Source: Octopus sinensis (lineage: Eukaryota). From it: DNA of 64,000 nucleotides. The stretch covers positions 23,870,001 through 23,934,000 of the forward strand of contig NC_043009.1 of the NCBI RefSeq assembly GCF_006345805.1, in the 5' to 3' direction. The notes below the pieces were generated by a model. The model searched no databases, was not told where the DNA came from, and saw only the letters and a list, made by a program, of their open reading frames with translations. Of the stretch, positions 756-59,197 are shown one piece after another (position 1 is the stretch's first letter; the number at the start of each line of letters is the position of its first letter). The position numbers were made by a program, and so were the translations under genes.

Positions 756-885
756 TTTTCTTCTTCTTCTTCTTCTTCTTCTTCTGCTTCCTCCTCCTCT
801 TCACCATCACCATCACCACCATTATCATCATCATCATCATCATCACCATCATCATCATCTTCTTCTACTTCCTCTTCAACATCAC

Positions 886-953
<68 letters not shown>

Positions 954-964
954 CCACCACCATC

Positions 965-1049
<85 letters not shown>

Positions 1050-1056
1050 CCACCAC

Positions 1057-1097
<41 letters not shown>

Positions 1098-1104
1098 CCA
1101 CCAC

Positions 1105-1156
<52 letters not shown>

Positions 1157-1375: not shown

Positions 1376-1539
1376 TATTATTGTTGTTGTTGTTTTTGTT
1401 ATATTTTTTCAACCAGTTCGAACCCTCACATTCTTGCGGAACGATCGGTTTTTCAACGTTATCCACATAAATGGCAAATTATTGGCACGTAAGTCAAAAT
1501 CCTTTATGTATATATGCAATGTGTGTGTGCATGCGTGTG

Positions 1540-2905: not shown

Positions 2906-4131
2906 ACACACACACACACACATATATATATATACACACGAGCAAAACGCCCCCCCACCATCCAATGGACGGTGCTGAACCATATCTGCTGAATAAAAGC
3001 AATCAGTGTTTTCTTTTCATTGAAAACATGCCTTTATTTCAATAAAGTTTTGGGTTTTGTCAAACGAAGTTAAGGCAAAAAAACAAAAACAAATAGTCTT
3101 TCCTTCCTTCATGCTAAATTTGAAGAAAATATCTCTTTTGCATCATAATTTTTAGGTCTTAGATATACTGCATCTTGTGACATTATTTCAAGCCAGCCGG
3201 CTTTTTGCTTGCGCAAACTGCATGTCCAATTTTCTCGCGTACGCGTAGTAACGATCGCAACAGCTGATGTACTTGTGCGTACAAATACACGTGGAGTGCT
3301 CAGTCACTTGTACGTTAAATTCACAAGCAGGCTGTTCCGTTGATCGTATCAACTGGAACCCTCATTATCGTAACCGATTGAGTGCCAGTGCCACCTATGG
3401 ATGCGTTGTTAATAAGTTCATGCGCAGGAAGGGCTGCGTGGCATCTTGGGCGAGTGATTTCTACTATGTCGTCGAATCGACCAATCAGTAAATCTAGGTG
3501 ATAAGTTTAAAAAAAAACGAAAAAACATCGTGTATATGCTTGTGTCTGTCTTTGTGATTGTGTTTGTCATCCCACTACTTCAAACCAGTGTTGGTTTGTT
3601 TATGTCCCCGTAATTTGGCGGGTCGCAAAAGGAAAATGATATAATAAAAATCAGGCTTAAGATAATAAATGCTGGGGTCACTTTGCTCGGCTAAACCACT
3701 TCAAAGCAATGAAAGTAAAAGATAAAAGAAAGACATGAAATTACGAGGTTCCAGGTTCGATTCTATTGCGAGGTAGCGTCATCGGCAAGAATCCCATTCG
3801 AATATATCACAACAAAGTTAGGGTTGTAAGAACGAAATAGTCTTGTCCTTCGTGGATAGCCTTAATGCAAAACAATGCTACAAACCAACACCTAAACCTT
3901 GATACACTCAGAGCACTCTATCGTATTGCAATAATTTGAGCCTAGATCAAACAAATTTCTTTCTTCGTACGCCAAAGAAACTACAAGGCGTATCATGTCC
4001 CCGAACCATTTCTACTTTGTATGTGGTTACGAATTAAAACTTACTTTTGTTTAATTAATTAATGATTTAAATTCATAAAAATGGTAATTCAATTAAAAAT
4101 TAATTATATTCTATTATACATTTACTTAAAG

Positions 4132-7100
4132 GAAAAAAAGGAAATATGAAGAGAGAGGAATCACAGAACAAGGCAATTCGGTTCCAAATAGCCAAAACAG
4201 TTGACAACAAGGCGAAGCTAAATCACTGTTTCAGAATGACGGGAGAAGATTTGAAAGATACTGTAATCGAAATGGGTTGCTTCCATCTTACATTCAAAAG
4301 AAATGCGTTACTGAAAAATATTAAGAGAATGGACAAAGATAATATAATTATTGAGACGTATGATGCTATTGATGATTCTGAAGGCAAAGGAAGATCTGAT
4401 TCTAGTAGATATGGAGGTGATGATGTTGAAAGGAATGTAAGATCTGATCATGGTTATTATGGAAGTGATGATGTTGAAACGAAAGGAAAATCTGATTCTA
4501 GTAGTTATGGAGATGATGATGTTGAACGGAAAGTAAGATCTGATCATGGTTATTATGGAGGTGATGATGTTGAAACGAAAGGAAAATCTGATTCTAGTAG
4601 TTATGGAGATGATGATGTTGAACGGAAAGTAAGATCTGATCATGGTTATTATGGAGGTGATGATGTTGAAACGAAAGGAAAATCTGATTCTAGTAGTTAT
4701 GGAGATGATGATGTTGAACGGAAAGTAAGATCTGATCATGGTTATTATGGAGGTGATGATGTTGAAAGGAAAGTAAGATCTGATCATGGTTATTATGGAG
4801 GTGATGATGTTGAAAGGAAAGTAAGATCTGATAATGGTTATTATGGAGGTGATGATGTTGAAAGGAAAGTAAGATCTGATAATGGTTATTATGGAGGTGA
4901 TGATGTTGAACGGAAAGTAAGATCTGACCATGGTTATTATGGAGGTGATGATGTTGAACGGAAAGTAAGATCTGATCATGGTTATTATGGAGGTGATGAT
5001 GTTGAAGGGAATGTAAGATCTGATAATGGTTATTATGGAGGTGATGATGTTGAAAGGAAAGTAAGATCTGATAATGGTTATTATGGAGGTGATCATGTTG
5101 AACGGAAAGTAAGATCTGATCATGGTTATTATGGAGTGATGATGTTGAACGGAAAGTAAGATCTGATAACGGTTATTATGGAGGTGATGATGTTGAACGG
5201 AAAGTAAGATCTGATAATGGTTATTATGGAGGTGATGATGTTGAACGAAAGTAAGATCTGACCATGGTTATTATGGAGGTGATGATGTTGAACGGAAAGT
5301 AAGATCTGATCATGGTTATTATGGAGGTGATGATGTTGAAGGGAATGTAAGATCTGATAATGGTTATTATGGAGGTGATGATGTTGAAAGGAAAGTAAGA
5401 TCTGATAATGGTTATTATGGAGGTGATCATGTTGAACGGAAAGTAAGATCTGATCATGGTTATTATGGAGGTGATGATGTTGAACGGAAAGTAAGATCTG
5501 ATAACGGTTATTATGGAGGTGATGATGTTGAACGGAAAGTAAGATCTGATAATGGTTATTATGGAGGTGATGATGTTGAACGGAAAGTAAGATCTGATCA
5601 TGGTTATTATGGAGGTGATGATGTTGAACGGAAAATAAGATCTGATCATGGTTATTATGGAGGTGATGATGTTGAACGGAAAGTAAGATCTGATAATGGT
5701 TATTATGGAGGTGATGATGTTGAAAGGAAAGTAAGTTCTGACCATGGTTATTATGGAGGTGATGATGTTGAACGGAAAGTAAGATCTGATCATGGTTATT
5801 ATGGAGGTGATGATGTTGAAAGGAAGTAAGATCTGATAATGGTTATTATGAGGTGATGATGTTGAACGAAAGTAAGATCTGATCATGGTTATTATGGAGG
5901 TGATGATGTTGAACGGAAGTAAGATCTGATCATGGTTATTATGGAGGTGATGATGTTGAAAGGAAAGTAAGATCTGATCATGGTTATTATGGAGGTGATG
6001 ATGTTGAAACGAAAGGAAAATCTGATTGTAGTAGTTATGGATGTGATGCTGTTGAACGGAAAGTAAGATCTGATCATGGTTATTATGGAGGTGATGATGT
6101 TGAAACGAAAGGAAAATCTGATTCTAGTAGTTATGGAGGTGATGATGTCGAACGGAAAGTAAGATCTGATCATGGTTATTATGGAGGAGATGATGTTGAA
6201 CGGAAAGTAAGATCTGATCATGGTTATTATGGAGGTGATGATGTTGAACGGAAAGTAAGATCTGATCATGGTTATTATGGAGGTGATGATGTTGAACGGA
6301 AAGTAAGATCTGATAATGGTTATTATGAAGGTGATGATGTTGAACGGAAAGTAAGATCTGACCATGGTTATTATGGAGGTGATGATGTTGAACGGAAAGT
6401 AAGATCTGATCATGGTTATTATGGAGGTGATGATGTTGAACGGAAAATAAGATCTGATCATGGTTATTATGGAGGTGATGATGTTGAACGGAAAGTAAGA
6501 TCTGATAATGGTTATTATGGAGGTGATGATGTTGAACGGAAAGTAAGATCTGATAATGGTTATTATGGAGGTGATGATGTTGAACGGAAAGTAAGATCTG
6601 ATAACGGTTATTATGGAGGTGATGATGTTGAACGGAAAGTAAGATCTGATAATGGTTATTATGGAGGTGATGATGTTGAACGGAAAATAAGATCTGATCA
6701 TGGTTATTATGGAGGTGATGATGTTGAACGGAAAGTAAGATCTGATAATGGTTATTATGGAGGTGATGATGTTGAAAGGAAAGTAAGTTCTGACCATGGT
6801 TATTATGGAGGTGATGATGTTGAACGGAAAGTAAGATCTGATCATGGTTATTATGGAGGTGATGATGTTGAAAGGAAAGTAAGATCTGATAATGGTTATT
6901 ATGGAGGTGATGATGTTGAACGGAAAGTAAGATCTGATCATGGTTATTATGGAGGTGATGATGTTGAACGGAAAGTAAGATCTGATCATGGTTATTATGG
7001 AGGTGATGATGTTGAAAGGAAAGTAAGATCTGATCATGGTTATTATGGAGGTGATGATGTTGAAACGAAAGGAAAATCTGATTGTAGTAGTTATGGATGT

Positions 7101-10100
7101 GATGCTGTTGAACGGAAAGTAAGATCTGATCATGGTTATTATGGAGGTGATGATGTTGAAACGAAAGGAAAATCTGATTCTAGTAGTTATGGAGGTGATG
7201 ATGTTGAACGGAAAGTAAGATCTGATCATGGTTATTATGGAGGAGATGATGTTGAACGGAAAGTAAGATCTGATCATGGTTATTATGGAGGTGATGATGT
7301 TGAACGGAAAGTAAGATCTGATCATGGTTATTATGGAGGTGATGATGTTGAACGGAAAGTAAGATCTGATAATGGTTATTATGGAGGTGATGATGTTGAA
7401 CGGAATGTAAGATCTGACCATGGTTATTATGGAGGTGATAATGTTGAACGGAAAGTAACATCTGATCATGGTTATTATGGAGGTGATGATGTTGAACGGA
7501 AAATAAGATCTGATCATGGTTATTATGGAGGTGATGATGTTGAACGGAAAGTAAGATCTGATAATGGTTATTATGGAGGTGATGATGTTGAACGGAAAGT
7601 AAGATCTGATCATGGTTATTATGGAGGTGATGATGTTGAACGGAAAGTAAGATCTGATAATGGTTATTATGGAGGTGATGATGTTGAACGGAAAGTAAGA
7701 TCTGATCATGGTTATTATGGAGGTGATGATGTTGAACGGAAAGTAAGATCTGATCATGGTTATTATGGAGGTGATGATGTTGAACGGAAAGTAAGATCTG
7801 ATAATGGTTATTATGGAGGTGATGATGTTGAACGGAAAGTAAGATCTGATAATGGTTATTATGGAGGTGATGATGTTGAACGGAAAGTAAGATCTGACCA
7901 TGGTTATTATGGAGGTGATGATGTTGAACGGAAAGTAAGATCTGATCATGGTTATTATGGAGGTGATGATGTTGAACGGAAAGTAAGATCTGATCATGGT
8001 ATTATGGAGGTGATGATGTTGAACGGAAAGTAGATCTGATCATGGTTATTATGGAGGTGATGATGTTGAAAGGAAAGTAAGATCTGATCATGGTTATTAT
8101 GGAGGTGATGATGTTGAACGGAAAGTAAGATCTGACCATGGTTATTATGGAAGTGATGATGTTGAACGGAAAGTAAGACCTGATAATGGTTATTATGGAG
8201 GTGATGATGTTGAACAGAAAGTAAGATCTGATCATGGTTATTATGGAGGTGATGATGTTGAACGGAAAGTAAGATCTGATCATGGTTATTATGGAGGTGA
8301 TGATGTTGAAAGGAAAGTAAGATCTGATCATGGTTATTATGGAGGTGATGATGTTGAACGGAAAGTAAGATCTGACCATGGTTATTATGGAAGTGATGAT
8401 GTTGAACGGAAAGTAAGACCTGATAATGGTTATTGGAGGTGATGATGTTGAACGGAAAGTAAGATCTGATCATGGTTATTATGGAGGTGATGATGTTGAA
8501 CGGAAAGTAAGATCTGATCATGGTTATTATGGAGGTGATGATGTTGAAAGGAAAGTAAGATCTGATAATGGTTATTATGGAGGTGATGATGTTGAACGGA
8601 AAGTAAGATCTGATCATGGTTATTATGGAGGTGATGATGTTGAACGGAAAGTAAGATCTGATCATGGTTATTATGGAGGTGATGATGTTGAACGGAAAGT
8701 AAGATCTGATAATGGTTATTATGGAGGTGATGATGTTGAACGGAAAGTAAGATCTGACAATGGTTATTATGGAGGTGATGATGTTGAACGGAAAGTAAGA
8801 TCTGATCATGGTTATTATGGAGGTGATGATGTTGAACGGAAAGTAAGATCTGATCATGGTTATTATGGAGGTGATGATGTTGAAAGGAAAGTAAGATCTG
8901 ATCATGGTTATTATGGAGGTGATGATGTTGAAAGGAAAGTAAAATCTGATCATGGTTATTATGGAGGTGATGATGTTGAACGGAAAGTAAGATCTGACCA
9001 TGGTTATTATGGAGGTGATGATGTTGAACGGAAAGTAAGATCTGATCATGGTTATTATGGAGGTGATGATGTTGAAAGGAAAGTAAGATCTGATAATGGT
9101 TATTATGGAGGTGATGATGTTGAACGGAAAGTAAGATCTGATAATGGTTATTATGGAGGTGATGATGTTGAACGCAAAGTAAGATCTGATCATGGTTATT
9201 ATGGAGGTGATGATGTTGAAAGGAAAGTAAGATCTGATCATGGTTATTATGGAGGTGATGATGTTGAACGGAAAGTTAGATCTGACCATGGTTATTATGG
9301 AGATGATGATGTTGAACGGAAAGTAAGATCTGATAATGGTTATTATGGAGGTGATGATGTTGAAAGAAAAGTAAGATCTGATAATGGTTATTATGGAGGT
9401 AATGATGTTGAACGGAAAGTAAGATCTGATAATGGTTATTATGGAGGTGATGATGTTGAACGGAAAGTAAGATCTGATCATGGTTATTATGGAGGTGATG
9501 ATGTTGAACGGAAAGTAAGATCTGACAATGGTTATTATGGAGGTGATGATGTTGAACGGAAAGTAAGATCTGATCATGGTTATTATGGAGGTGATGATGT
9601 TGAAAGGAAAGTAAGATCTGATCATGGCTATTATGGAGGTGATGATGTTGAACGGAAAGTAAGATCTGATCATGGTTATTATGGAGGTGATGATGTTGAA
9701 AGGAAAGTAAGATCTGATCATGGTTATTATGGAGGTGATGATGTTGAACGGAAAGTAAGATCTGACCATGGTTATTATGGAAGTGATGATGTTGAACGGA
9801 AAGTAAGACCTGATAATGGTTATTATGGAGGTGATGATGTTGAACGGAAAGTAAGATCTGATCATGGTTATTATGGAGGTGATGATGTTGAACGGAAAGT
9901 AAGATCTGATCATGGTTATTATGGAGGTGATGATGTTGAAAGGAAAGTAAGATCTGATCATGGTTATTATGGAGGTGATGATGTTGAACGGAAAGTAAGA
10001 TCTGACCATGGTTATTATGGAAGTGATGATGTTGAACGGAAAGTAAGACCTGATAATGGTTATTATGGAGGTGATGATGTTGAACGGAAAGTAAGATCTG

Positions 10101-11236
10101 ATCATGGTTATTATGGAGGTGATGATGTTGAACGGAAAGTAAGATCTGATCATGGTTATTATGGAGGTGATGATGTTGAACGGAAAGTAAGATCTGATAA
10201 TGGTTATTATGGAGGTGATGATGTTGAACGGAAAGTAAGATCTGACCATGGTTATTATGGAGGTGATGATGTTGAACGGAAAGTAAGATCTGATCATGGT
10301 TATTATGGAGGTGATGATGTTGAACGGAAAGTAAGATCTGATAATGGTTATTATGGAGGTGATGATGTTGAAAGGAAAGTAAGATCTGACAATGGTTATT
10401 ATGGAGGTGATGATGTTGAACGGAAAGTAAGATCTGATCATGGTTATTATGGAGGTGATGATGTTGAACGGAAAGTAAGATCTGATCATGGTTATTATGG
10501 AGGTGATGATGTTGAAAGGAAAGTAAGATCTGATCATGGTTATTATGGAGGTGATGATGTTGAACGGAAAGTAAGATCTGATCATGGTTATTATGGAGGT
10601 GATGATGTTGAACGGAAAGTAAGATCTGACCATGGTTATTATGGAGGTGATGATGTTGAACGGAAAGTAAGATCTGATAATGGTTATTATGGAGGTGATG
10701 ATGTTGAACGGAAAGTAAGATCTGACCATGGTTATTATGGAGGTGATGATGTTGAAAAGAAAGTAAGATCTGACCATGGTTATTATGGAGGTGATGATGT
10801 TGAACGGAAAGTAAGATCTGACCATGGTTATTATGGAGGTGATGATGTTGAAAGGAAAGTAAGATCTGATAATGGTTATTATGGAGGTGATGATGTTGAA
10901 AGGAAAGTAAGATCTGATCATGGTTATTATGGATGTGATGATGTTGAAAGGAAAGTAAGATCTGATAATGGTTATTATGGAGGTGATTATGTTGAAAGGA
11001 AAGTAAGATCTGATAATGGTTATTATGGAGGTGATGATGTTGAAAGGAAAGTAAGATCTGATAATGGTTATTATGGAGGTGATGATGTTGAAAGGAAAGT
11101 AAGATCTGACCATGGTTATTATGGAGGTGATGATGTTGAACGGAAAGTAAGATCTGATCATGGTTATTATGGAGGTGATGATGTTGAAAGGAAAGTAAGA
11201 TCTGATCATGGTTATTATGGAGATGATGATGTTTAA
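4132..11236 (+). CDS. Terminal coding exon of gene A: predicted repetitive secreted peptide precursor (unique Cys-loop region + ~143 x SD(H/N)GYYGGDDVERKVR); first exon(s) not found in window
   Basis: Candidate acceptor ttatacatttacttaaag|G at 4131/4132 (phase 1) opens in frame into the 4146 ORF; ~88 non-repetitive codons with three KR sites run directly into the repeat; nine short deletions (10 nt total) break the frame inside the array; TAA at 11234-11236. Confidence 0.7.
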
Positions 11237-11272
11237 AGGAAAGTAATATCTGATCATGGTTATTATGGAGGT
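4395..11272 (+). repeat. 48-bp coding minisatellite, ~143 units (consensus TCTGATCATGGTTATTATGGAGGTGATGATGTTGAACGGAAAGTAAGA)
   Basis: Direct inspection; 4395-11236 plus 10 deleted nt = 142 units + 36 nt; a further degenerate unit follows the stop. Confidence 0.98.
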
Positions 11273-11470
11273 CATAGTATTTGTTGTGGCTATAATAATA
11301 TTCCATCGTCACCCTGAATGTTCTTCGAACTGCTTTTCAAACTTATTATTGTGTATTTCTCACTTTTTTCATTGTCCTTATTATTTTGTTCCAGAAAAAA
11401 TATTGTAATTGTTTTTATTTTTTCTAAAATGGAATACTGTGTAACTTTTTTGAAATTGAAAACTTTTACC

Positions 11471-11476
11471 AATAAA
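11471..11476 (+). terminator. Candidate polyadenylation signal AATAAA for gene A (second at ~11704)
   Basis: AATAAA ~235 nt after the stop; common by chance in AT-rich DNA. Confidence 0.3.
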
Positions 11477-12269
11477 TGCACAAATTTTTATGAATTACTT
11501 CGCATTTTCTGTTGTGTGACCATTACTGGAATCCATATTGGTCCTTCTATACCTTCTTCACCTTCTTCTTGAAGACCAAATAGAACTATAACAGCAACAA
11601 CAACAAAAACGACAACACCAACAATAACTATAACTACAACAACACCCAAAACTGGCAACAGATGCAATAGTAACTGCAACAAGTGAATGAAAGGCAAACA
11701 AAACAATAAAATTTAGAGCAGCTATTTACTAGGCATTCATTATCGGCGTTTTATTTGCCTCTCATTCTTTCGGGGTCGATAAATTAAGTACCTGTTGTTT
11801 ACTGGGGTTGATTTGTCCAATGTTTTGCGTCTATATTTCTTTAACAAAACGATCCGCGTAAATTGACACAAGCCCGAGAAACAACTCTTCAGCTTACAGT
11901 TTGTATTCTATTACAGTATGAATGATATTGTTCGCTGCAACATTGGAAAATATACTCTAGATCACTCAACGAGTGTTTACAGCTTAGTATGACAGACCCC
12001 AGAGAAGTGAAGGTGGAGTTATTCTCAGAAGGATTTGTACACATTCTGAGTTGTAATTCAGCCGAATTCAATTTTGCTTTTCGTCCGTTCATGGGTCGGT
12101 AAAATATGTATCAGCCGAACATTTCTCACTAAAATTGCTGGCCTTGTGCCATTTGAATTCATCGTCATGTTCATCATCATCATTATGATCATCGTCGTCA
12201 TCATCACCATCATCATCGACGTCGTCGTCGTCATCATCATCATCATCATGATTGTTGTTGTTGGTGTTT

Positions 12270-12480
12270 TTTTTTATTAATGCTATAAGCTTGCAGAATT
12301 GTTAGCGCATCAGACGAAGTTACTTGGTAGCATTTATTCTAGTTCTTTACGTTCTGAGTTCAAATTCCGCTGAGGTGTACTGTGCCCCCATCGTTTCATG
12401 TCTGATAAGATAGGTACCATTTGAGCACTGGTATCGATGTAATTCTACCTTCTGCCAAAATTCCAAATCATTATTGTTAC

Positions 12481-13693: not shown

Positions 13694-15882
13694 CTATGTT
13701 TGACTTTTGCTTTACGTTTGTACAAGTTGGCTCCAAGTCTCACCCAGAGACCTCAGGAGACAACAGGCTGGAAGTTCATGTTGTTATGCCTAGTGTGCCA
13801 TATATTTGGTTTTGTATTTAGTATTGTATTAGTGAATGTCTAAAAGAAACCATACGAAAATTATATTTGTTTTAAAACTTGAGATTACATAGTAAGTATT
13901 TTGCGTAGGATATGAGCAGTTCCCATGAGCACTATCTTTTGAATTTCTGCCATTTTTGGATTTCCTCGTATCTGAGTTAGGTAGCAATCAGCCCCTTTTG
14001 CTATCATTCCCAGGGCACCTATGACAACAGGTATTGTTTTAGTCATCAGGTTCCACATTTTGCTGATTTCTATTTCAAGATCTTTATATTTGCTCAGTTT
14101 TTGGTAGGTCTTCCGATACGTTTATATCGATTGGGACAGTCATATCAATAAGGAGGCATGTTCTTTGTCTGAAGTCTTTCAATATGATGTCTGGCCTATT
14201 TGCATCTATCTTTCTGTCAGTTTGAATGGTGAAGTTCCAGAGGAGTGAGATGTGGTCATTTCCAAGCACTTGAGGTGGTTTGTGTTCCCACCAGTTTTTT
14301 TCATGGGGCAAGTCCAGGCTTTTGCAAATTACCCAGTGAATATATTGTGCAGTTCTATCATGCCTGTTGAGATACTCTGTAGGCGCTAGAAGACTGCACT
14401 TGGAGACAACATGATCAATGGTTTCATTTTGTTGTTGACATACACGACATGTTGGGCTACTGCCGTTCTTTAATATGTTGGCCTGGTAGTTCCTTGTTGG
14501 AAGGCATTGATCTTGAGCTGCTATGATAAATCCTTCTGTTTCAGATTTTAAGCCAGAGGCTATTAGCCATTGATGGGTCAGGGCTTTGTCAACATCTACA
14601 TTATTCGCTCTCTTTGGGTATTTGCCATAGAGAGGTTTTTCTTGCCATTTATCATTCAGAATATCTAAGGCAGCAGATTTAGCACGGGTTTTCATGCGCT
14701 TAGCTTTTTCTGTGCCTGTTTCTTGTATGTCTATCTCTAATTCCGAAATTTGTTGTATTCGGAACTCACTTAGATATTCCTTTGCCTGTTTTGTTACTGA
14801 GTATGATGCTTTCTTGTTTTCATGTTTTGAGACAAGTTTTAACATCCAGTCCTCAGAGTTTTTCAGGTAGGTGTCTAGGCCAATTGTAGCAATCTTCATT
14901 GTTATTGCCAGTTGTAAAAGTCCACGGCCTCCCTCTTTTCTTGGCAGATAAAGTTGTTCTGTATCTGCCTTAGGGTGGTGCATTCTATGCATTGTCAACA
15001 GTTTTCGTATTTTTCTGTCAAGATTACATATTTCAGTAATTGACCAGTCAACAATATTGAAACTGTAAGTCACGACTGGTATGGCTAAAGCATTGATCGC
15101 TTCGATCCTGTTTCTCGCATTCAGCTCTGTCTTGAGTATTGCTCTTACTCTGCGATAACATTCTCTCCTGATCCTTTCCTTCATCACTGAATGCCTTATT
15201 CCGCCTCCTTCAATTACCCCTGGGTCTAACTCTTTTATGACATGTTGCTGGTCAAGGTTAACGTTAGATGTTTCTGTCATTATTCCTTTGATAAAGGTAG
15301 CTTTTGCACATTTATCGAGGCCAAATTGCATTCTGATGTCATCACTGAATTGTTTAACAATCGCTAGTAAGCCCTTGAGTTGTTGGTCATTTTTTGAAAG
15401 AGCTTTAAATCATCCATGTAAATGAGATGATTTATATTTTTATCAAACATTTTGTATCCGTACTGCGCGTCATTGAGCAATTTTGAGAGAGGTATTAAGG
15501 CTAAACAAAAGAGGAGTGGTGATAGTGAGTCACCCTGGAAAATGCCACATGAAATTTTTACATCACCAGCATTTAGAGATTCATTGTCACTGCTCAAAGA
15601 TAGTGTGGTTCTCCATGATCTCATACTTAGAGACAGAAAGTTTCGCAGAGTAGGTGCTATTTTATACATTTCCAGGCATTTCTTAATCCAGCTATGTGGT
15701 AGGCTATCAAAAGCCTTTTTATAGTCTATCCAGGCTATTGATAAGTGTTTGTGTCGTTTGTGACAATCTTTTAAGATCATCTTATTGATGAGTAGTTGAT
15801 CTTTACAACCAAAGGATCCACGTTTGATCCTTTCTGTCCATTAGGGAATATGTTGCTGTCTGTTAAAAAACAGATGTTAGCG

Positions 15883-19226: not shown

Positions 19227-19954
19227 ATATATATATATGTGAAAATAAAGATACAAAATTGTATTGTCCTCACGTAACAAATGTCTTAATGTAATATTTT
19301 TACATAAAAATATGAGTGTATATTTTCACAATGTGACATTTACGTGAGTAAAAAAAATGCATTTTATTGAGACATTTTCGTATATATGCTTATATATATT
19401 CGAGAGTAAGTCAAAAGTTATCCACACTTTCGCCATAACATATCTTTATTATTGTCACACTGCCTTCTGCACATGCGTGCCTATAACTGGTACGATTGTG
19501 ATCACGTATGTAACTATCTAGCTATCTATAATATATATATACATATATACATATATGCATGCATACATGCATATATACATATATAAATGCATACATATAC
19601 ACACACATATATATTTGCATGTATGCATGTACCAACTGAAACACACAAATCTGTTAATGTGTATGTATGAGGTATGTGTTCGTGTTGTGTGTAGAACATG
19701 ATAACAACAATGATTATGATGACGACGGCGACGACGGCGACGGTGGCGATGATGAGATAGAGTGGAGGATAAGGGACTTTCAATGGTGAAACACGATGGT
19801 ACCAACAACACACATCACCATTACCCTGGTTTTTCTCATTTCTCTTTAGACGGAACGCATCTTATCATCATAATCGACGTTCTTGTCTTTTATCGTAGTC
19901 TTTGACGTCATCATCGTCATCATCACCATCAGCGTCGAAATCTTCGTCGGCATC

Positions 19955-19986
<32 letters not shown>

Positions 19987-20017
19987 CATCATCATCACCA
20001 CCACCACCACCACCACC

Positions 20018-20077
<60 letters not shown>

Positions 20078-20117
20078 TTTATCATCATCGCCATCGTGGT
20101 GGTGGTGGTTTCCGACA

Positions 20118-22760: not shown

Positions 22761-23018
22761 TATAGAGTCCAACGTGATGTATGCCGGTCACTTGGTAGCA
22801 ATTGTAATGGAAGTTTGAACCATTACAATTCAGCTCTCCTATATTGTCTGAAAAATTTTTACACTGTGGTATACTTTCCTCCGCTCTATTTTCATCAACA
22901 TTTCGACTCATTTTGATTATTGCCCCGTCATCTCCATTGTCATATATTGGTTTATGATCATTTTCAACTCGCCTGTGTAGCAAAGATTCTGCACCAGTTC
23001 TATTCGTAATTACTTCAC
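22761..23018 (-). CDS. Gene B exon 2 (258 nt, phase 1-1): EVITNRTGAESLLHRRVENDHKPIYDNGDDGAIIKMSRNVDENRAEESIPQCKNFSDNIGELNCNGSNFHYNCYQVTGIHHVGLY
   Basis: Acceptor ttgcttttgtttttctag| and donor |gtgagt; open frame in the phase required by exon 1; unique non-repetitive sequence. Confidence 0.75.
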
Positions 23019-24812: not shown

Positions 24813-27800
24813 CTCATTTTATGACTACGAAGATGACTCATTTTATGACTACGAAGATGACTAATGAGTCCACAGACGTTGCATGTCAGCATCAAAGGAA
24901 GACCCTTCCCATCTGCCCTTCCTGACATCCCTCCTTACTTTCTCATGTGCAACTCGAGATTTCTCAAACGTGGCTGTTCCCTCATGCACAATCCTTCTCC
25001 ACCTGCTACGATCAATAGCTATGCCTTCCCATGTGTCAGGAGAGATGCAAGCATCTCTCAAGGAAGCCTTCAGCAAGTCCTTATACCTCTTTTTTGGTTT
25101 ATGTGGAGGTCGTTCTCATTTAGCTAACTCTCCATCAAAGAGTTGTTTTGGCATCCTTGAATCCTTCATTCTGACCAGATGACCACTCCATCTGAGCCTT
25201 TGCTTTAACATAAGAGCTTCTATACCTTCACGTCAGCCTTCGAGTATTTCAAGATCACTGATGCGGTCCTTCCACTTAATGCTATAGATCCGTCTGAGGC
25301 ACATCTGATGGAAACGTTCCAGATGTTTAAGGTGGTATCGATATGTGAACCACCTCTCGCAGACATAGAAAAGAGAAGGGAGCACACATGCCTTGTACAC
25401 CTTTATCTTTGTCTTTCTGCATATGTCTCGCCGACTCCAGAGGCGCTTTTCTAGCCTTCCGAAAGCAACACTTGCTTTCCTAATTCTATATGGAATTTCA
25501 TCATCCACATTGCCATATCTATTAATAGTGCTTCCCAGGTAGACAAACTGATCGACTACATCAAGTCGTTTACCATTCACATAGATATTTGGTACACTAT
25601 ACTGCTTACCAGGGGCAGGTTGATGCATGACAACAGTTTTCTTGAGATTGACTGTCAATCCTAAGGCAATGCAAGCATCAGAGAATGCATTCAAAACGTG
25701 TTGCATATCAATCTCTATGTGCGCTACTAGCTCACAATCATCAGCATACAAAAGGTCTCTTATGATAGAGGTAAATATCTTTGTTTTTGTAGCAAGGCGC
25801 CTGATAATAAATATGCTGCCAGAGGTTCGATAATGGACGTAAACACCGTATCTGCCGTTTCTGAATGCAATACAGAACACCATCGCGAAATATATGGAAA
25901 ATAGGGTCGGTGCCAGAATATCCCCCTGTTTCACTCCATTTTGTATTGAAATGGGCTCCGACATATTCCCTCTAACATTCACCCTACCATTCATGTCTTC
26001 ATGAAAAGACCTAACCAAAGCAAGGAACTTTTCAGGACACCCAAGTTTCTGGAGGACTTTCCACAATGCTTTTCTATTGACGGTATCAAAGGCTTTTGTC
26101 AGATCGACAAACACCTGATACAAATCCAGACCCTGTTCCACACACTTTTCCTGGAGCTGTCTAGCTGAAAAGATCATATCAGCAGTGCCACGTCCCACAC
26201 GAAAGCCAGATTGACTTTCTGGAAGAACACAATCTGCAATGTATTTCAGCAGACGATCCAGGAGGATCCTGCATAAAACCTTTCCTACAGCAGACAGCAA
26301 TGATACTCCCCTATAATTACCACAATTATTCCTGTTGCCCTTTACAGGACCACCATTACTGCATCTCTCCAGTCTTCAGGTACAGATTCACTAGTCCATA
26401 CCTTACCAAACAAAGAGTGAAGTTTCTGCAGAATTTTCTCACCACCATGCTGTAACAACTCCGCATGTATGCCATCCATACCCGGAGACTTCCCATTATT
26501 CAACCTTGTGACAGCCATTGCAACTTCTTCCAACTTTGGTAGTTCTGCGAGTGCTGCTTTCACAGGCAATCCAGGGATGAGATTGAGAACATCCTCACTA
26601 ACTACAGACTGCTAATTCAAAAGTTCATCAAAGTGTTCTTGCCACCTTCGCAGAATTCCTTGTGAATCACGAAGTTCTTTACCATCCCTGCTTCGAATTA
26701 GTGTCATCAGGGAAGACGTTGGTCCATAAACTTCTCGCAAGAGACCATACAACAGCTTTGTGTTATTGGAATTTGATGCCGCCTGTATCTCGTCAGCCTT
26801 CTTACTCCACCACGTATCCCTCATCCGAGAGAGCTTTTGCCCCACACGTGATTTTACGTCCTTAAGTTCCCTATGCAACACTTCCCTTTCCTGTGACTTT
26901 GCTGACAAATAGCGTGACAAAGTACGCCTTTTATCAGCCACTAAATCATCTATATGTTCATCATTTTCTTTGAACCAATCTTGATGCTTTCTTTGTATCA
27001 ATCTCAGAACTTTCTTGCCTATATCATAAACTGAGCTTTTAAGGGTCGACTAATCCTCCCCAATATCTGCAGCATTCATTTCCCCTCGTAAAGTTCTCTT
27101 CACACTATTATACCTGAGACGATCAAAATTCAGTCTTTTAGGCAGGGTCATCCCTGCAGCTCGGATTTTATGTTTTGTGACTAATTTCACTTTTGCACGT
27201 ACTAGGCGGTGGTCAGTCCAACACTCAGCTCCACGAAGAACACGAACACACTGCACATCCTTGTCTATCACGCACCCTAACTAGGATGTAATCCAGAATA
27301 TGCCATTCTTTAGATGCAGGGTACATCCATGTAGTCTTAAGCTTATTCTTTTGTTGAAACATGGTATTGGTAACACACAGACTCAGCTCCTCACACATCT
27401 GCAGCAAAAGCATGCCATTACTTTTACACTTCCCCACCCCATGCTTCCCAATCACAGTCCATGTGTTAAAATCCCTATCCACTCTAGCATTAAAGTCACC
27501 CAGTACGATGACTTTGTCTGCCCGAGGGATATTTCTTATAATACCCTTCAAAGCATGGTAGAAAGAAAGTTTTTCGTCATCAGTATAGCACATAGTTGGA
27601 GCATACACACTCACCAAGGTCATATAATTTCCTTTAGACAAAGGAATTCTCATGGACATAAGACGCTCATTAATTCCGATTGGGAATTCTTCCAACTTGT
27701 CCACAAGAGTAGTCTTAACAGCAAATGCCACTCCAGCTTCTCCTCTAAGCTCTTCATCTCTCCCTTTCCAAATGAATGTATATTTTCCACAAGTTTCTAT

Positions 27801-31149: not shown

Positions 31150-31910
31150 ACAAACTCACATACAAATTCCGCCGAGGTCGACTTTACCTTTCATCGTTTC
31201 GAGGTTGATAAAATAGGTACCAGTTGTGTGCTGGGTTCTATGTAATCGACTGTCCTCTCCCTCCAAATTTCACGCCTTGTGCCTACAGCAGAAAGGATTA
31301 TTACGATTATTAAGGCGGTGAGCTGGCAGAACCGTTAGCACGCCGGGCGAAATGCGTATCCGTATTTCGTCTGCCGTTACGTTCTGGGTTCAAATTCCGC
31401 CGAGGTCGACTTTGCCTTTCATCCTTTTGGGGTCGATAAATTAAGTACTATTTACGCACTGGAGTCGATATAATCGACTTAATCCGTTTGTCTGTCCTTG
31501 TTTGTCTCCTCTGTGTTTAGCCCCTTGTGGGTAGTAAAGAAATAGTTATTTCGTCTGCCGCTACGATCTGAGTTCAAATTCCGCCGATGTCGACTTTGCC
31601 TTGAATCCTTTCGGGGCCGATTAAATAAGTACCAGTTACGCACTGGAGTCGATATAATCGACTTACTCCCTTTGTCTGTCCTTGTTTGTTCTCTCTATGT
31701 TTAGTTCCTTGTGGGCAGTAAATAAATAAGAAATAAAAATGGTTAGCTCGCCGGGCGAAACTCAGCAGTATTTACCCTGTCTTTACGTTTTGAGTTCAAA
31801 TTGCACCGAGGGACGACTTTGCCTTGAATCCTTTCGGAGTCGATAAATTAAGTACCAGTTGTGTATTCCAAAATTTCGAGCCTTATGCCTAGAGTAGAAA
31901 AGATTATTAT
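31150..31910 (+). mobile_element. Tandem cluster of four SINE family 1 copies
   Basis: Repeated caaattccgccgaggtcgactttgcc...ggggtcgataaattaagtacc blocks; full copy 31314-31545. Confidence 0.88.
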
Positions 31911-34425: not shown

Positions 34426-36904
34426 ATATAAAAGGTGGCTGATCGTTTTGCCGTAACATTTATATCCGCATCCAGTTCTATTTAGCATATCAGATAGAGG
34501 TGACAGTGCCAAGCAGAAAAGGAGTGGCGAGAGAGTGTCTCCCTGGAATATTCCTCTTCTAATGGGGATGGCTTTGGTTTACATGAGTCCCTCTTTTGTT
34601 TGGAGCTGTAGCACGGTTTGCCATTTATTCATAGAGTGCCCTATGAAATTTATAAGGGTTGGTGCTACTTTGTTAATGGCTAGTGTTTCGACGATCCATG
34701 TCTGGGCGATGCTATCAAACGCCTTTTTGAGGCCTTTCTTCTTTCTGTGGCTGTCTTCAGTTATGGCTTTATTAATCATTAGTTGATCTTTACAGCCATA
34801 TGAGCCTTTGCGGCATCCTTTCTGCTCTTCTGGAAACAGGTTGTTTTCGTCCAGGTGCTTGTCCAACCTTTGCGATATTACTGCAGTAAGTGCCTTGTAT
34901 ATTGTAGGGAGACAGGTTATTGGTCTGTAGTTTTCTGGTTTTGCTGTCTCATTTGACTTGGGAATTAAGATGGTTTTCCCCTTCGTGAGCCATTCAGGCA
35001 TTGTCTCTGGCTCTGCCAGTATGTTGTTAAAGTTTTCAGCCAGCTTTTTGTGCATTCCTGTTAGATATTTCAACCAGAATTTGGGGATCTTGTCATGCCC
35101 AGGTGCCTTCCAGTTGCTTAGTCTTTGCAGTGCCTGGGTGACCTCTTCAGTTGTTATGGGGGTCCAAAGTTGCTCAGATGCTGAGTTTGTTGTTTTGACA
35201 CTTCTTTTTTTTTTGGTTGTTCGTTCGCCGACCATATTTCTCTCCATAATTCTTCCACTTCTGCCGTTGGTGCTGCAGTGATTTCTATTTTATTTTTATT
35301 TTTGCCAAGTTCTTGGTAGAACTTTTTGGGGTTGGAGTTGAACTTTTTTTTTTGTTCAAAGAAGCGCTGGCGTTTCTCGTACCGGCGGATATCTTGCTTC
35401 AGCGTTTCTTTTATCTCAGATAAATCTTTTTCTGTGATGTTATATTTTCGGAGTATTTTTGTTTTCTTTTTGTTGCTCAGTAGCGTTGATTGTCTACTGA
35501 TTTCATTAAGAATCGACAGATCTTTTCTCATTTTTTGTATTTTGTTTTGGATGTTATTTATCCACAGGGTTTGTTTGGGTGGTGGTACTCCTGTTTGGAT
35601 GGGTTTGAGTGAGTATCCAGCTTCTTTTGTGGCTGCAGTGGCTGCTGCGTATACTAAGTCATCTAGCTTAGTGATATCGCTTTTTGTTTCAGTGGCTATT
35701 AGTTCAGTGACGGCTAGGTTTATGCTGTTTATAATTGGTGTTGTTGTTTCGTCTATTTTGATTTTTGGGAGATATGGTCGGTGGTCCATTTTGAGCTCTG
35801 TGGTTTTCAGTTCTTTGATTATTTTACTTTTTATATTATCATAATCATTAGGCTCCCCTTTGTTGTCTCTAGGTTTTAGATTTGTGTCGCTTTCTTTCTT
35901 ATTTATATGTTTGTTTGCCGTGTTTTGGCTTGCTGTTTGTCGTGTATTATTATGCATCCTCACGGTCTGGGTTTGTTGTTTTTTTATTTATATCGTTTTT
36001 GTTGGGAATGTTACGTTTGTCATCGTGTTTTATTGTTTCAGTGTTTATATTAATGGGCATCGTTGTGTGGCTTCTATCTACATTTTCCTGGTGTATTTTT
36101 TCTTTTAGATGTTCTATTTCTATTTCTGATATTTATTTTGCTTTGAGAATGTACCTTCGTACGTTAGCTATTTTATTAGGGTTCATTGCTGTATCCAAGT
36201 CTTTATTTATGTTATTTTCCTTCCATATTTTATATGTATGTGTTGTTGTGTTTACATTTTTGGGGTAGAGCACTGCTGTGAAGTATGCGTGCAGGATAGA
36301 AATGTATTCCTCACGTGTCCATTTATGTCTTTTGGGTTTTATCTGCGAGACATGAGGAACAACGTCCGGCCCATTATTTTGACGGTCGTCATTTTCGTAG
36401 GGTACCGGTCCTTTCATTTCTGTTGTCACATTGTTTTGCACGTGTAGTTTTTCGTACATTTTGTGTTGTAAGTTTAAGGTACGTACTTCCAGAATGTTAA
36501 TCTTGGGTTGAATAATATCGGTGGTATTTGATTTCTTTGTAGTTCCTTTGTACATAGTGTTTAGGGTTGGGGATGATCTGGTGTTGATTGATCGTAATGT
36601 TTCACGCATGTTTACATGTGTTGTGTTAGAGGTGGAGATGACATCGAGTCAAAATACATCATTTCGTTTCGAAAATAGTAATAAATTTTAATGAGCATTA
36701 CTTACTCGGGTACAGTCCAATCCTTTGTTAGTAAACCTTTGGTTTCATACGATGTCCTTGTTTTCGATGTTTGCGGATAGATTTCAGAGCTCTGTTGTAT
36801 CGTTCTTACATCTTAAACGTCCCCCGGTGTTCTCTCTTAAACGTCCCCCGGTGTTCTCCTTATTATTATTATTATTATTATTATTATTGTTATTATTATT
36901 ATCA

Positions 36905-42074: not shown

Positions 42075-42174
42075 NNNNNNNNNNNNNNNNNNNNNNNNNN
42101 NNNNNNNNNNNNNNNNNNNNNNNNNNNNNNNNNNNNNNNNNNNNNNNNNNNNNNNNNNNNNNNNNNNNNNNNNN
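42075..42174. other. Assembly gap (100 N; true size unknown)
   Basis: Run of exactly 100 N. Confidence 1.
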
Positions 42175-52600: not shown

Positions 52601-53202
52601 CCCCCAGCCGAACCCACACCCCACTTGGGCTTTCCCCACTCTCGCCCACCTCCTTACCACATCACTCCACACTACACTACACCATACAACTTTACACATC
52701 ACATCACAACACCCCCACAGCACACCGCCCACACACCCATCCCCACATCTTTACACCTACACATACATACACATATCACATCACAACACAACACCCACAC
52801 ACCCATCCCCACATCTCCACACCCACACATACATACATACATACACACGTCCCGACCACCAGCCCTCTTTCACACGCAAATACATACTCTCTTATACACA
52901 CACGCACCTTTATGTTGGGGGCACCTTCGTTTTGGAAGTCACTTGACCCTGTTATCTCCCCTACTGTCTCTCTAGTGTCTGACCTCTGACCTCTGCCCGA
53001 AGTCAGAACACAATGATAGATCGTTAGCTCCTACACGCATTTTTTCTCTCCTTGTTTCTCTCCTTGTTTGTTTTCTGTGTATCATTCTGTCGAAGAGCGT
53101 AGGCTCGAAACGTAAAATCTTGTTCTATTTCTATTCCTGAGCGCCATACTAATACATTTGTTTGTACTCCACCTGCCTTCGTCTTTTGTTTATTTTCGTA
53201 AA
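49648..53202 (+). mobile_element. Penelope-like element (Neptune-type RT, family P2) with direct terminal repeats; no GIY-YIG visible
   Basis: IPKGF N-terminal motif, KPADKGGAVVV, RPIVS, TMDI.SLY, GVAMGTRMGPNYANLFVG; 49648-49730 repeated at 53125-53202. Confidence 0.88.

Positions 53203-58836: not shown

Positions 58837-58845
<9 letters not shown>
56990..58845 (-). mobile_element. Penelope-like family P2, 5'-truncated copy (RT C-terminus, pyrimidine-rich tail, terminal repeat), with nested SINE
   Basis: SFLDISV, IPYSQFLR, RGYP motifs; tail colinear with 52260-53200. Confidence 0.85.
57403..57635 (+). mobile_element. SINE family 1, young copy
   Basis: Near-identical to 34204-34425 and 31314-31545. 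Confidence 0.9.
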
Positions 58846-58875
<30 letters not shown>

Positions 58876-58929
58876 TGTATACCTAACAGTCCCATACAGT
58901 TAACTGTGTATGTATATATACATAAATGC

Positions 58930-59154
58930 ATGCATGTGTGGTAAGTAGCTTGCTTACCGACGACAGGGTTCCGGGTTCAGTCCCACTGCGTGGCACCCTA
59001 GGCAGGTATTTCTACTGTAGACTCGGACCGTCCAAAGCCTTATGAGTTTATTTGGTAGACGGAAACTGCAAGACGCCCGTCTTACACACATTTATATATA
59101 TATATATATATAGACGATGCTTCAGCATGGCTGCAGTCAACTGACACAAGTAAA

Positions 59155-59160
<6 letters not shown>
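58930..59160 (+). mobile_element. SINE family 2, internally deleted
   Basis: tggtaagtagcttgcttaccga head and tgac..aagtaaaag tail. Confidence 0.8.

Positions 59161-59197
<37 letters not shown>

What the first reader, a model, noticed from the sequence alone, without database searches (positions are those of the whole stretch)
4443..11236. Processing would unmask an ATCUN (Ser-Asp-His) copper site next to sulfatable/oxidisable tyrosines
Seen: cleavage after RKVR leaves N-terminal S-D-H in most units, followed by GYY and an acidic GGDDVE tail. Established: a free-amine Xaa-Xaa-His N-terminus is the ATCUN Cu(II)/Ni(II) motif (albumin DAH, histatin DSH); Tyr flanked by acidic residues and Gly is typical of tyrosylprotein sulfotransferase substrates; Tyr can be DOPA-modified or dityrosine cross-linked. 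Inference: the metal site is latent in the precursor and switched on by proteolysis. The one frequent non-synonymous variant (CAT/AAT, His/Asn) removes exactly that ligand, so the array would yield a mixture of metal-binding and non-binding peptides. This could serve copper handling, antimicrobial redox chemistry or curing of a secretion in a haemocyanin-using animal.
Basis: inference. Interest (0 to 1): 0.7.

Follow-up and report, generated by a model that had tools for sequence, protein, structure and literature searches.

The report
Octopus secreted protein with 144 repeats
The 48-base repeat is real and almost certainly the main coding exon of a secreted protein found only in Octopus, but the proposed copper-binding histidine sits at the most variable position of the repeat and is absent from the sister species, so a copper function is possible chemistry, not demonstrated biology.

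Summary
The window is Octopus sinensis chromosome CM016871.1. Positions 4383-11284 hold 144 head-to-tail 48-bp units. In one frame they read RKVRSD(H/N)GYYGGDDVE.

The array continues exon 4 of LOC115218617. That gene has a signal peptide and a Cys-containing N-domain under purifying selection (dN/dS 0.32). RefSeq splices the array out as a 6.9-kb "intron". The likely reason is that eight units carry private 1-2-bp deletions, which look like long-read consensus errors.

Of 135 intact units, 119 have R-x-x-R, followed by SDH in 78, SDN in 38 and PDN in 3. His/Asn is the only frequent non-synonymous variant.

The prerequisites are present: secretion, a minimal convertase motif, and Xaa-Xaa-His. 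However, the O. bimaculoides orthologue (about 34 My diverged) has RNVRSYDGSYGGDNVE with no histidine. Unit position 7 takes H, N, S, C, D and Y across unit types. The unit consensus evolves near neutrally (dN/dS about 0.8). Cleavage would also leave a C-terminal RKV, not an acidic tail.

My best reading is a lineage-restricted secreted repetitive polyampholyte that acts as a material or matrix protein. A convertase-processed polyprotein is the main rival. No expression, peptide or literature data were found.

The parts
1419..1493 (+). Exon 3 of LOC115218617 (residues 89-113 of XP_036364445.1, RTLTFLRNDRFFNVIHINGKLLARK). Exons 1 and 2 lie upstream of the window, at L001 10001-10093 and about 22776-22943.
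   Evidence: tblastn gives 100% identity.
4132..4382 (+). Start of exon 4, after the acceptor AG at 4130-4131. It holds the end of the Cys-containing N-terminal domain (...NHCFRMTGEDLKDTVIEMGCFHL) and a degenerate linker (TFKRNALLKNIKRMDKDNIIIETYDAIDDSE).
   Evidence: Sequence reading, tblastn, and an orthologous acceptor in O. bimaculoides. N-domain dN/dS is 0.32.
4383..11236 (+). 143 units of 48 bp encoding (R/x)KVRSD(H/N)GYYGGDDVE, ending with an in-frame TAA at 11234-11236. They are organised in higher-order repeats of 5, 7 and about 19-22 units.
5103..5292 (+). Two defective units (5103-5149 and 5246-5292). Each is an ordinary unit type (D and G) minus one base of a GG run. The sister 7-unit higher-order copy is intact.
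5821..5960 (+). Three adjacent defective units carrying four 1-bp homopolymer deletions (types F, D and D). The sister higher-order copy at about 6873-7016 is intact.
   Evidence: Clustering P = 0.0035.
7977..8070 (+). Two adjacent defective units (TT->T and AA->A), both type D.
8407..8452 (+). One defective unit, type c (RKVRPDN...) minus 2 bp within TATTAT. Intact copies of the same 5-unit block (E b c D D) lie at 9701-9940 and 9941-10180.
11237..11317 (+). A degenerate 144th unit plus a short unique tail that stays in frame after the TAA (RKVISDHGYYGGHSICCGYNNIPSSP*). O. bimaculoides has a homologous post-stop tail ending IPSSP*.
4501..11394 (+). The 'intron' of the RefSeq model. The donor GTAGTT sits inside a TKGKSDS|SSY unit and the acceptor is ttgttccAG at 11393-11394. 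It removes almost the whole array and gives the C-terminus ...SDSKKIL*. I regard it as an annotation work-around for the frameshifts.
   Evidence: P0001 sequence, gene end at L001 36674 = window 11408, sequence reading.
11471..11476 (+). AATAAA polyadenylation signal about 235 nt after the array's stop. It is conserved in O. bimaculoides (ccaataaatgcaca).

Best explanation
The array is the large 3' coding exon of an Octopus-restricted secreted protein: LOC115218617 in O. sinensis and LOC106876298 in O. bimaculoides.

The protein has three parts:
- a signal peptide;
- a roughly 140-residue, beta-rich, four-Cys N-terminal domain under purifying selection;
- roughly 140 copies of a 16-residue polyampholyte unit.

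Each unit is a charged block (DDVE-RKVR-SD) alternating with an aromatic/glycine block ((H/N)GYYGG).

The eight frame-breaking deletions are most likely residual long-read consensus errors. The RefSeq model that splices the array out is most likely wrong.

Mechanism (inferred): the protein is exported intact and acts as an extracellular material or matrix protein. Its many weak Arg/Lys-Tyr, acid-base and Tyr-Tyr contacts would drive self-association or coacervation, and possibly oxidative Tyr cross-linking. The array is homogenised by unequal exchange and drifts quickly between species.

On this view the SDH triplet is an incidental, lineage-specific state of the most variable unit position. 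It would become a Cu(II)/Ni(II) site only if the chain is cut after RKVR.
For: Gene identity and secretion:
- 100% match to XP_036364445.1, which has an N-terminal hydrophobic signal.

The gene is real:
- N-domain dN/dS is 0.32 with dS 0.20 against O. bimaculoides.

The array is coding:
- It continues exon 4 in frame for 1014 nt.
- The orthologue's RefSeq isoforms (305, 289 and 273 aa, differing by exactly one 16-aa unit) are translated through the units in the same frame and stop at the end of the array.
- The period has stayed exactly 48 bp in both species.
- No indel is shared between units, whereas 14 of 26 substitution types are shared.
- Every defective unit equals a common unit type minus 1-2 bases of a short run, and has an intact counterpart in a sister higher-order copy.
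- All ten lost bases are deletions, and the defective units are clustered (P = 0.0035).

Array size:
- The O. bimaculoides array is also about 6 kb. A 5957-N gap is flanked by units on both sides.

Material-like character:
- More than 100 short G/Y-rich units, fraction of charged residues 0.44, net charge per residue -0.06.
- A folded terminal domain joined to a repetitive core.
- Fast concerted evolution (unit dN/dS about 0.8).
- No homologue outside Octopus among 5.8 bn and 1.84 bn proteins.
Against: - No expression, tissue or proteomic evidence was obtainable.
- The RefSeq model for O. sinensis excludes the array. Its intron has a good acceptor, so real splicing cannot be ruled out.
- If the deletions are real, only about 15 units are translated.
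- Near-universal conservation of R-x-V-R-S is what a convertase-processed precursor would also show.
- AlphaFold gave no trustworthy model. The N-domain scored pLDDT 36. For the repeat, one of five models scored pLDDT 63 as a beta-meander and the others 28-39, with no structural neighbour.
- Within-array variants show no clear excess of synonymous types (8 of 26).
Confidence: 0.5

Rival explanations
1. Convertase-processed polyprotein. A furin-like or PC-like enzyme cuts after each R-K-V-R in the secretory pathway. This releases about 120 peptides of 15-16 residues (SD[H/N]GYYGGDDVERKV). About two thirds would have a free Ser-Asp-His ATCUN Cu(II)/Ni(II) site and one third would not. The peptides would act in copper handling, redox or antimicrobial chemistry, or curing of a secretion.
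For: - Signal peptide present.
- R-x-x-R in 119 of 135 intact units, with Ser at P1'.
- R1, V3, R4 and S5 are conserved between species, while flanking positions change.
- Furin unmasking of an ATCUN has a precedent in hepcidin-25 (PMC9779829).
- X-X-His with a non-Pro second residue is sufficient for ATCUN binding (established chemistry).
Against: - His is absent from the orthologue's unit (SYD/SYN after the site).
- Position 7 is hypervariable (H/N/S/C/D/Y).
- Unit dN/dS is about 0.8.
- The site is only the minimal R-x-x-R, with Val at P2, Glu at P5 and Asp at P7-P8. These are unfavourable for furin (own knowledge).
- To my knowledge, roughly 120-140 copies far exceeds the copy number of known convertase-processed peptide precursors, which have tens of copies.
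- The released peptide would be anionic and end in RKV.
- No peptide or literature evidence was found.
Confidence: 0.25
2. Truncated or short-repeat protein. Either the frameshifts are real, or the RefSeq intron is real. The mature protein would then carry only about 2-15 units, and the remaining roughly 6 kb would be an expanded minisatellite in an intron or 3'UTR with no protein-level role.
For: - The assembly as given stops the frame at 5157.
- The RefSeq model XP_036364445.1 ends ...SDSKKIL, using a GT...AG pair around the array.
- There is no clear synonymous excess among within-array variants.
- Two minus-strand frames are open as well.
Against: - All indels are private, confined to short runs, deletions only and clustered.
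- The underlying array has kept an exact 48-bp period and an open frame over 6.9 kb, and across about 34 My (PMC10700109).
- The orthologue's models translate the units and stop exactly at the end of the array.
- The donor GTAGTT is weak.
Confidence: 0.17
3. Rapidly evolving secreted recognition or reproductive product, such as an egg-coat, pheromone-like or mucus component, processed or not. Between-species divergence of the unit, including position 7, would be driven by diversifying selection rather than drift.
For: - Unit dN/dS is about 0.8 while the N-domain is 0.32.
- All four NAT codons are seen at position 7.
- The gene is genus-restricted.
Against: - With 16 codons, dN/dS is not distinguishable from neutrality.
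- No tissue data are available.
Confidence: 0.08

Closest known systems
Hepcidin-25 and other proteolytically unmasked ATCUN peptides (histatin-5 DSH, neurokinin B DMH, albumin DAH)
   Same: An Xaa-Xaa-His that becomes an N-terminal Cu(II)/Ni(II) site only after cleavage at a basic site. Hepcidin's DTH is exposed by furin (PMC9779829).
   Different: Those are single-copy sites. Even for hepcidin the biological role of the ATCUN remains uncertain according to that paper. Here the triplet would be present in about 78 tandem copies, is polymorphic (His/Asn), and is absent from the orthologue.
Multi-copy convertase-processed precursors (molluscan and cnidarian FMRFamide/RFamide precursors, nematode polyprotein allergens, profilaggrin, fungal Kex2-processed repeat proteins such as the ustiloxin precursor)
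   Same: A signal peptide followed by tandem units, each bounded by a basic processing motif. Profilaggrin also has a folded N-terminal domain.
   Different: Copy numbers there are about 4-40 (own knowledge), against about 140 here. Their sites are usually KR, RR or R-x-K/R-R, while here only R-x-V-R is present. Their peptide cores are conserved between species and this one is not. No sequence homology was found.
Secreted repetitive Gly/Tyr-rich material proteins (resilin GGRPSDSYGAPGGGN, mussel foot proteins, sandcastle-worm cement VGGYGYGGKK, squid suckerins and beak proteins)
   Same: Very long arrays of short G/Y-rich units with charged residues, secretion, fast concerted evolution, and Tyr available for DOPA or dityrosine chemistry. 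The minor unit type ...KSDSSSYG... resembles resilin's SDSYG.
   Different: The resemblance is compositional only and no homology was detected. This unit is a strict polyampholyte with a blocky DDVE-RKVR charge pattern. Neither cross-linking nor tissue is known.
Yeast stress protein DDR48 (the name NCBI first gave the O. bimaculoides orthologue) and streptococcal Fibrinogen_BP (PF08017)
   Same: SYG-type low-complexity repeats in DDR48. A 16-residue charged period in Fibrinogen_BP, which gave a Pfam hit at E = 2e-35.
   Different: Both similarities come from periodic low-complexity sequence and not from homology. They involve different kingdoms and have no shared non-repeat domain.
DUF4773 (PF15998) secreted invertebrate proteins
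   Same: The C-terminal hairpin of the N-domain (C-x12-13-D[ML]GCF[HK][LI]) matches the end of DUF4773 repeats in P0003 (E = 1.2e-5 library-wide). P0003 contains five DUF4773 domains.
   Different: The Pfam model itself does not hit the octopus protein. Pairwise BLASTP is weak at E = 0.17. Only about 30-47 residues are involved.

Membership tests
ATCUN (amino-terminal Cu/Ni-binding) peptides | His at position 3 of the peptide | tested here: met
   SDH follows R-x-x-R in 78 of 119 motif-bearing units of O. sinensis. It is not met in 41 units (SDN or PDN), nor in any unit of O. bimaculoides (SYD/SYN).
ATCUN (amino-terminal Cu/Ni-binding) peptides | Residue 2 is not proline | tested here: met
   Residue 2 is Asp in all SDH units.
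ATCUN (amino-terminal Cu/Ni-binding) peptides | A free alpha-amino group on residue 1, meaning the chain really is cut immediately before Ser | not testable with these tools
   This needs N-terminal sequencing or undigested peptidomics. Trypsin would create the same SDH N-terminus artificially.
ATCUN (amino-terminal Cu/Ni-binding) peptides | Measured high-affinity square-planar Cu(II)/Ni(II) binding | not testable with these tools
   This needs spectroscopy or calorimetry on synthetic peptides.
Convertase-processed multi-copy peptide precursor | N-terminal signal peptide | tested here: met
   XP_036364445.1 starts MKSVTVAYVLFVMLSCLTIAYS|YV. This was judged by inspection, as no signal-peptide predictor was available. 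It is identical in the orthologue apart from one residue.
Convertase-processed multi-copy peptide precursor | Each unit bounded by a basic convertase motif | tested here: met
   R-x-x-R is present in 119 of 135 intact units. It is only the minimal motif, because the preferred R-x-K/R-R is not present.
Convertase-processed multi-copy peptide precursor | The peptide core is conserved between species more than the spacers | tested here: not met
   Five of 16 residues differ between the species consensus units, all outside the basic motif (K2N, D6Y, H7D, Y9S, D14N). dN/dS is about 0.8.
Convertase-processed multi-copy peptide precursor | Mature peptides detected | not testable with these tools
   Full-text searches found no peptide strings.
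Secreted repetitive material/matrix proteins (kind, not a homologous family) | A long array (more than 50 units) of short low-complexity units rich in Gly/Tyr plus charged residues, with a secretion signal | tested here: met
   144 units. Each unit has G x3, Y x2, D x3 and R x2. Fraction of charged residues is 0.44. Signal peptide present.
Secreted repetitive material/matrix proteins (kind, not a homologous family) | Gland- or epithelium-specific expression and presence in a secreted material; DOPA, dityrosine or sulfate modification | not testable with these tools
   No expression or proteome record was found.
DUF4773 (PF15998) | A match to the Pfam model above its gathering score | tested here: not met
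   There was no DUF4773 hit at E <= 1. Only a remote hit to one DUF4773 protein was found.

The most novel reading that the evidence does not exclude
The array is translated in full and cut at every R-K-V-R. That would make it by far the highest-copy convertase-processed peptide precursor known in an animal, with about 120 peptides per molecule. The His/Asn polymorphism would set a genetically encoded ratio of copper-binding (ATCUN) to non-binding peptides, a ratio that has been retuned between Octopus species.
Probability: 0.1. Interest if true: 0.7.

Novelty: new member of a known kind. Interest (0 to 1): 0.35.

Why it matters
If the array is translated, the current RefSeq protein for this O. 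sinensis gene (238 aa) misses about 90% of the real product. The O. bimaculoides models (273-305 aa) skip an unsequenced gap of about 6 kb inside the array. This is a concrete example of how tandem-repeat exons of lineage-restricted secreted proteins are lost from cephalopod annotations.

Such proteins are often the basis of clade-specific materials such as adhesives, cuticles, egg coats and mucus. If the chain is also cut at its roughly 120 R-x-V-R sites, it would be an unusual way to mass-produce short peptides with a switchable copper site.

The evolutionary comparison made here lowers the odds that copper binding is the selected function. The chemistry itself remains easy to test.

Tried and rejected
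1. Homologue searches. The word-indexed database was searched with the ORF and again with the N-domain alone. A full HMMER scan was run over 1.84 bn representatives. Only the two Octopus species were found, plus one weak DUF4773 protein.

2. Pfam.
- On the gene products, only a sub-threshold DUF6805 hit appeared.
- On the array, hits to Fibrinogen_BP, the rhabdovirus glycoprotein, Teneurin EGF and Mistic appeared. I rejected these as artefacts of periodic low complexity.
- A PDB sequence search hit only a nuclear pore protein at E = 2e-4, which I also treat as low-complexity similarity.

3. Structure prediction.
- The N-domain scored pLDDT 36 and is unusable.
- The 12-unit repeat gave one model of five at pLDDT 63, with one 8-residue strand (DDVERKVR) per unit.
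- That model has no structural neighbour at E <= 0.001. I treat it as a probable repeat hallucination.

4. Within-array test for coding. Eight of 26 variant types are synonymous in the proposed frame, against 4-9 in the other frames. This has no discriminating power.

5. Exact look-up of the O. bimaculoides isoform X2 returned nothing. Isoform X1 worked.

6. Rfam on the whole window found nothing.

7. Literature.
- No hits for the peptide strings, LOC or XP identifiers, or 'DDR48-like'.
- A general search on octopus Tyr-rich repeat proteins found nothing relevant.
- The gene is absent from the supplements of two O. vulgaris atlas papers.

8. Motif ideas. EF-hand and RTX-like calcium motifs were considered by eye, and the unit does not fit them. 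Tyrosine sulfation is only weakly suggested: there are three acidic residues within +/-5 of each Tyr, but none at -1, and a basic cluster lies at -5 to -8. It was not testable here.
Full report
**Where the window comes from.** The 337-aa ORF at 4146-5159 matches XP_036364445.1, 'uncharacterized protein LOC115218617 [Octopus sinensis]', at 100% identity over the shared part. An exact look-up places that gene on GCA_006345805.1 chromosome CM016871.1. The window equals locus L001 shifted by 25,266 bases. The rest of the window consists of microsatellites, SINE copies and retrotransposon debris.

**The observation.** Tandem Repeats Finder reports one 48-bp array at 4370-11272, with 144 copies, 94% matches and no indels at its resolution. 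My tiling gives 144 units from 4383 to 11284, comprising 44 distinct unit sequences.

- In the frame inherited from exon 4, the consensus unit reads RKVRSDHGYYGGDDVE.
- Of the 135 intact units before the in-frame TAA (11234-11236), 119 carry R-x-x-R. These are followed by SDH in 78 units, SDN in 38 and PDN in 3.
- CAT/AAT (His/Asn) is the only frequent non-synonymous variant, with 43 occurrences. The two other frequent variants are synonymous: CGG/AGG (32 occurrences) and GAT/GAC (21 occurrences).

Three things were missed:

- The frame is broken eight times in the assembly.
- Two minus-strand frames of the unit are also open.
- A peptide released by cutting after RKVR would end ...DDVERKV(R), not in an acidic tail.

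**Is it a gene, and is the array coding?** The RefSeq product begins with a typical signal sequence (MKSVTVAYVLFVMLSCLTIAYS). It continues with a roughly 140-residue domain containing four Cys.

- Exon 1 lies 15 kb upstream of the window, and exon 2 lies about 2.4 kb upstream of it.
- Exon 3 is at window 1419-1493.
- Exon 4 starts at 4132, behind an AG acceptor.

Against the O. bimaculoides orthologue (LOC106876298, locus L002), 158 N-domain codons give dS 0.20, dN 0.065 and dN/dS 0.32. This is therefore a real gene under constraint. Non-coding flanks are 80-85% identical between the species. The two lineages split about 34 Mya (PMC10700109).

The RefSeq model for O. sinensis leaves the array after 2.4 units. 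It uses a weak donor (A|GTAGTT at 4501) and rejoins at 11395, giving ...SDSKKIL*. I think this is a work-around for the frameshifts, for four reasons:

1. All ten lost bases are deletions within short runs (GG, AAA, TT, AA, TATTAT). There are no insertions.
2. Each defective unit is otherwise identical to a common unit type (D, G, F or c), and each has an intact counterpart at the same place in a sister higher-order repeat. Examples:
   - G-D-H-I-**J**-K-L against **M**-D-H-I-D-K-L;
   - N-L-O-D-**P-Q-R**-E-S-D against N-L-O-D-F-D-D-E-S-D;
   - E-b-**e**-D-D against E-b-c-D-D.

   So no indel has ever been propagated, whereas 14 of 26 substitution types have.
3. The defective units are clustered: three adjacent pairs, P = 0.0035.
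4. In O. bimaculoides the RefSeq isoforms (305, 289 and 273 aa, differing by one 16-aa unit each) are translated through the units in the same frame. They stop at the end of the array.

That array is interrupted by a 5,957-N assembly gap flanked by units on both sides, so it is probably also about 6 kb long. Either explanation of the private deletions, sequencing error or selection against frameshifts, implies an array that has been kept in frame. I put the probability that the array is translated at about 0.8.

**What the family conserves, and what it does not.** The O. bimaculoides unit is RNVRSYDGSYGG(D/N)NV(E/G/D).

- Conserved between the species consensus units: R1, V3, R4, S5, G8, Y10, G11, G12, D13, V15, E16.
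- Changed: K2N, D6Y, H7D, Y9S, D14N.
- In nucleotides, 8 of 48 differ, 6 of them non-synonymous, giving dN/dS of about 0.8. With only 16 codons this is imprecise. It is nevertheless much higher than the N-domain value and close to the neutral expectation.

Position 7, the proposed copper ligand, is the most variable site of the unit:

- His, Asn, Ser and Cys in O. sinensis unit types;
- Asp and Asn in the O. bimaculoides array;
- Tyr in its edge unit KKVRSDYGIY.

All four NAT codons occur. No unit of O. bimaculoides contains any His. H and N units are interspersed in an order not distinguishable from random (runs z = -1.0).

The ATCUN triplet is therefore a derived, polymorphic state in the O. 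sinensis lineage. It is not a family feature.

**How it most likely works.** Shown: the protein is secreted, has a folded N-terminal domain, and carries a very long, strictly periodic array that evolves fast and is homogenised. The rest is inferred.

The unit alternates a ten-residue charged block (DDVE-RKVR-SD) with an uncharged aromatic/Gly block. The charged block has four acidic and three basic residues, giving a fraction of charged residues of 0.44 and a net charge per residue of -0.06. Arg/Lys, Tyr and Gly in this arrangement are the ingredients of self-associating, coacervating secreted materials. Arrays of more than 100 short units are typical of such materials (mussel foot proteins, resilin, worm cement; own knowledge). 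They are not typical of peptide precursors. I therefore favour an intact extracellular material or matrix protein, with confidence about 0.5 for the whole statement.

The near-universal and conserved R-x-V-R-S is exactly what a convertase site would look like, and the unit obeys the monobasic rule (Arg at P4). The points against it are:

- the motif is only minimal, and acidic residues sit at P5, P7 and P8;
- the copy number is far beyond known precursors;
- the peptide core is not conserved.

If cutting does occur, Cu(II) binding by the SDH peptides is close to certain chemically. A biological role would still need demonstration. Even for hepcidin, the textbook furin-unmasked ATCUN, the role of the motif 'remains to be seen' (PMC9779829).

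**Comparison with known families.** There is no sequence homology to anything outside Octopus.

- The early NCBI name 'stress protein DDR48-like' and the Pfam Fibrinogen_BP hit (E = 2e-35) are artefacts of periodic low complexity.
- The N-domain has a faint resemblance to the end of DUF4773 domains, but it fails the Pfam model.
- Structure prediction was uninformative.

**Verdict.** The gene is a new, mis-annotated member of the broad class of lineage-restricted secreted tandem-repeat proteins. Interest is moderate (0.35). It would rise to about 0.7 if full processing and a copper-dependent function were shown, which I rate at about 10%.

No step had to be referred.

Noticed in passing
window 11237-11317; L002 26700-26815: After the stop that ends the array, the same frame stays open in both species and ends at a homologous stop. 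O. sinensis reads RKVISDHGYYGGHSICCGYNNIPSSP*. O. bimaculoides reads KKVRSDYGIYVGDDPVIKKVPTGHTNCYGDKKIPSSP*. This may be an ancestral Cys-containing C-terminal tail now cut off by two different earlier stops: TAA replacing GAA in one species, and TGA inside a 30-nt truncated unit in the other. It may also be chance in a short AT-rich stretch.
   Followed up: partly
L002 20491-26447: The chromosome-scale O. bimaculoides assembly has a 5,957-N gap in the middle of the orthologous array. A stretch of reverse-complement unit sequence (...TCTTACATTCCTTTCAACATC) sits at the left gap edge. The RefSeq isoforms X1-X3 there differ by exactly one 16-aa unit, which is probably an effect of aligning transcripts within repeats.
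   Followed up: partly
window 14084-15780, 25233-27731, 34579-36609 (all - strand): Fragments of non-LTR retrotransposons are present. Pfam hits are RVT_1, the endonuclease/exonuclease/phosphatase family and zf-RVT. The ORFs are broken.
   Followed up: partly
window 59983-62069 (- strand): A 542-aa reverse-transcriptase ORF is directly followed by a 153-aa ORF with a weak GIY-YIG endonuclease match (E = 8e-4). This arrangement is typical of Penelope-like elements.
   Followed up: partly
window 31363-31728, 11740-11800, 12340-12400: Copies of a tRNA-like SINE are present (…GTTCAAATTCCGCCGAGGTCGAC…TTTCGGGGTCGATAAA.TAAGTACC…). Two tandem 184-bp copies lie at 31363-31728. Rfam reports nothing at gathering threshold.
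   Followed up: no
window 42075-42174: A 100-N assembly gap.
   Followed up: no
window 801-1156, 12159-12249, 19908-20089: Long (TCA)n trinucleotide arrays occur in the intron upstream of exon 3 and downstream of the gene. The window has more than 100 microsatellite arrays in total.
   Followed up: no
window 50000-53000 and 57000-60000: A GC-rich (0.47-0.52), strongly C-skewed CT-rich block is followed about 5 kb later by a G-skewed AG-rich block. They may be inverted copies of the same low-complexity element. A 237-aa ORF at 51065-51778 has no Pfam match.
   Followed up: no
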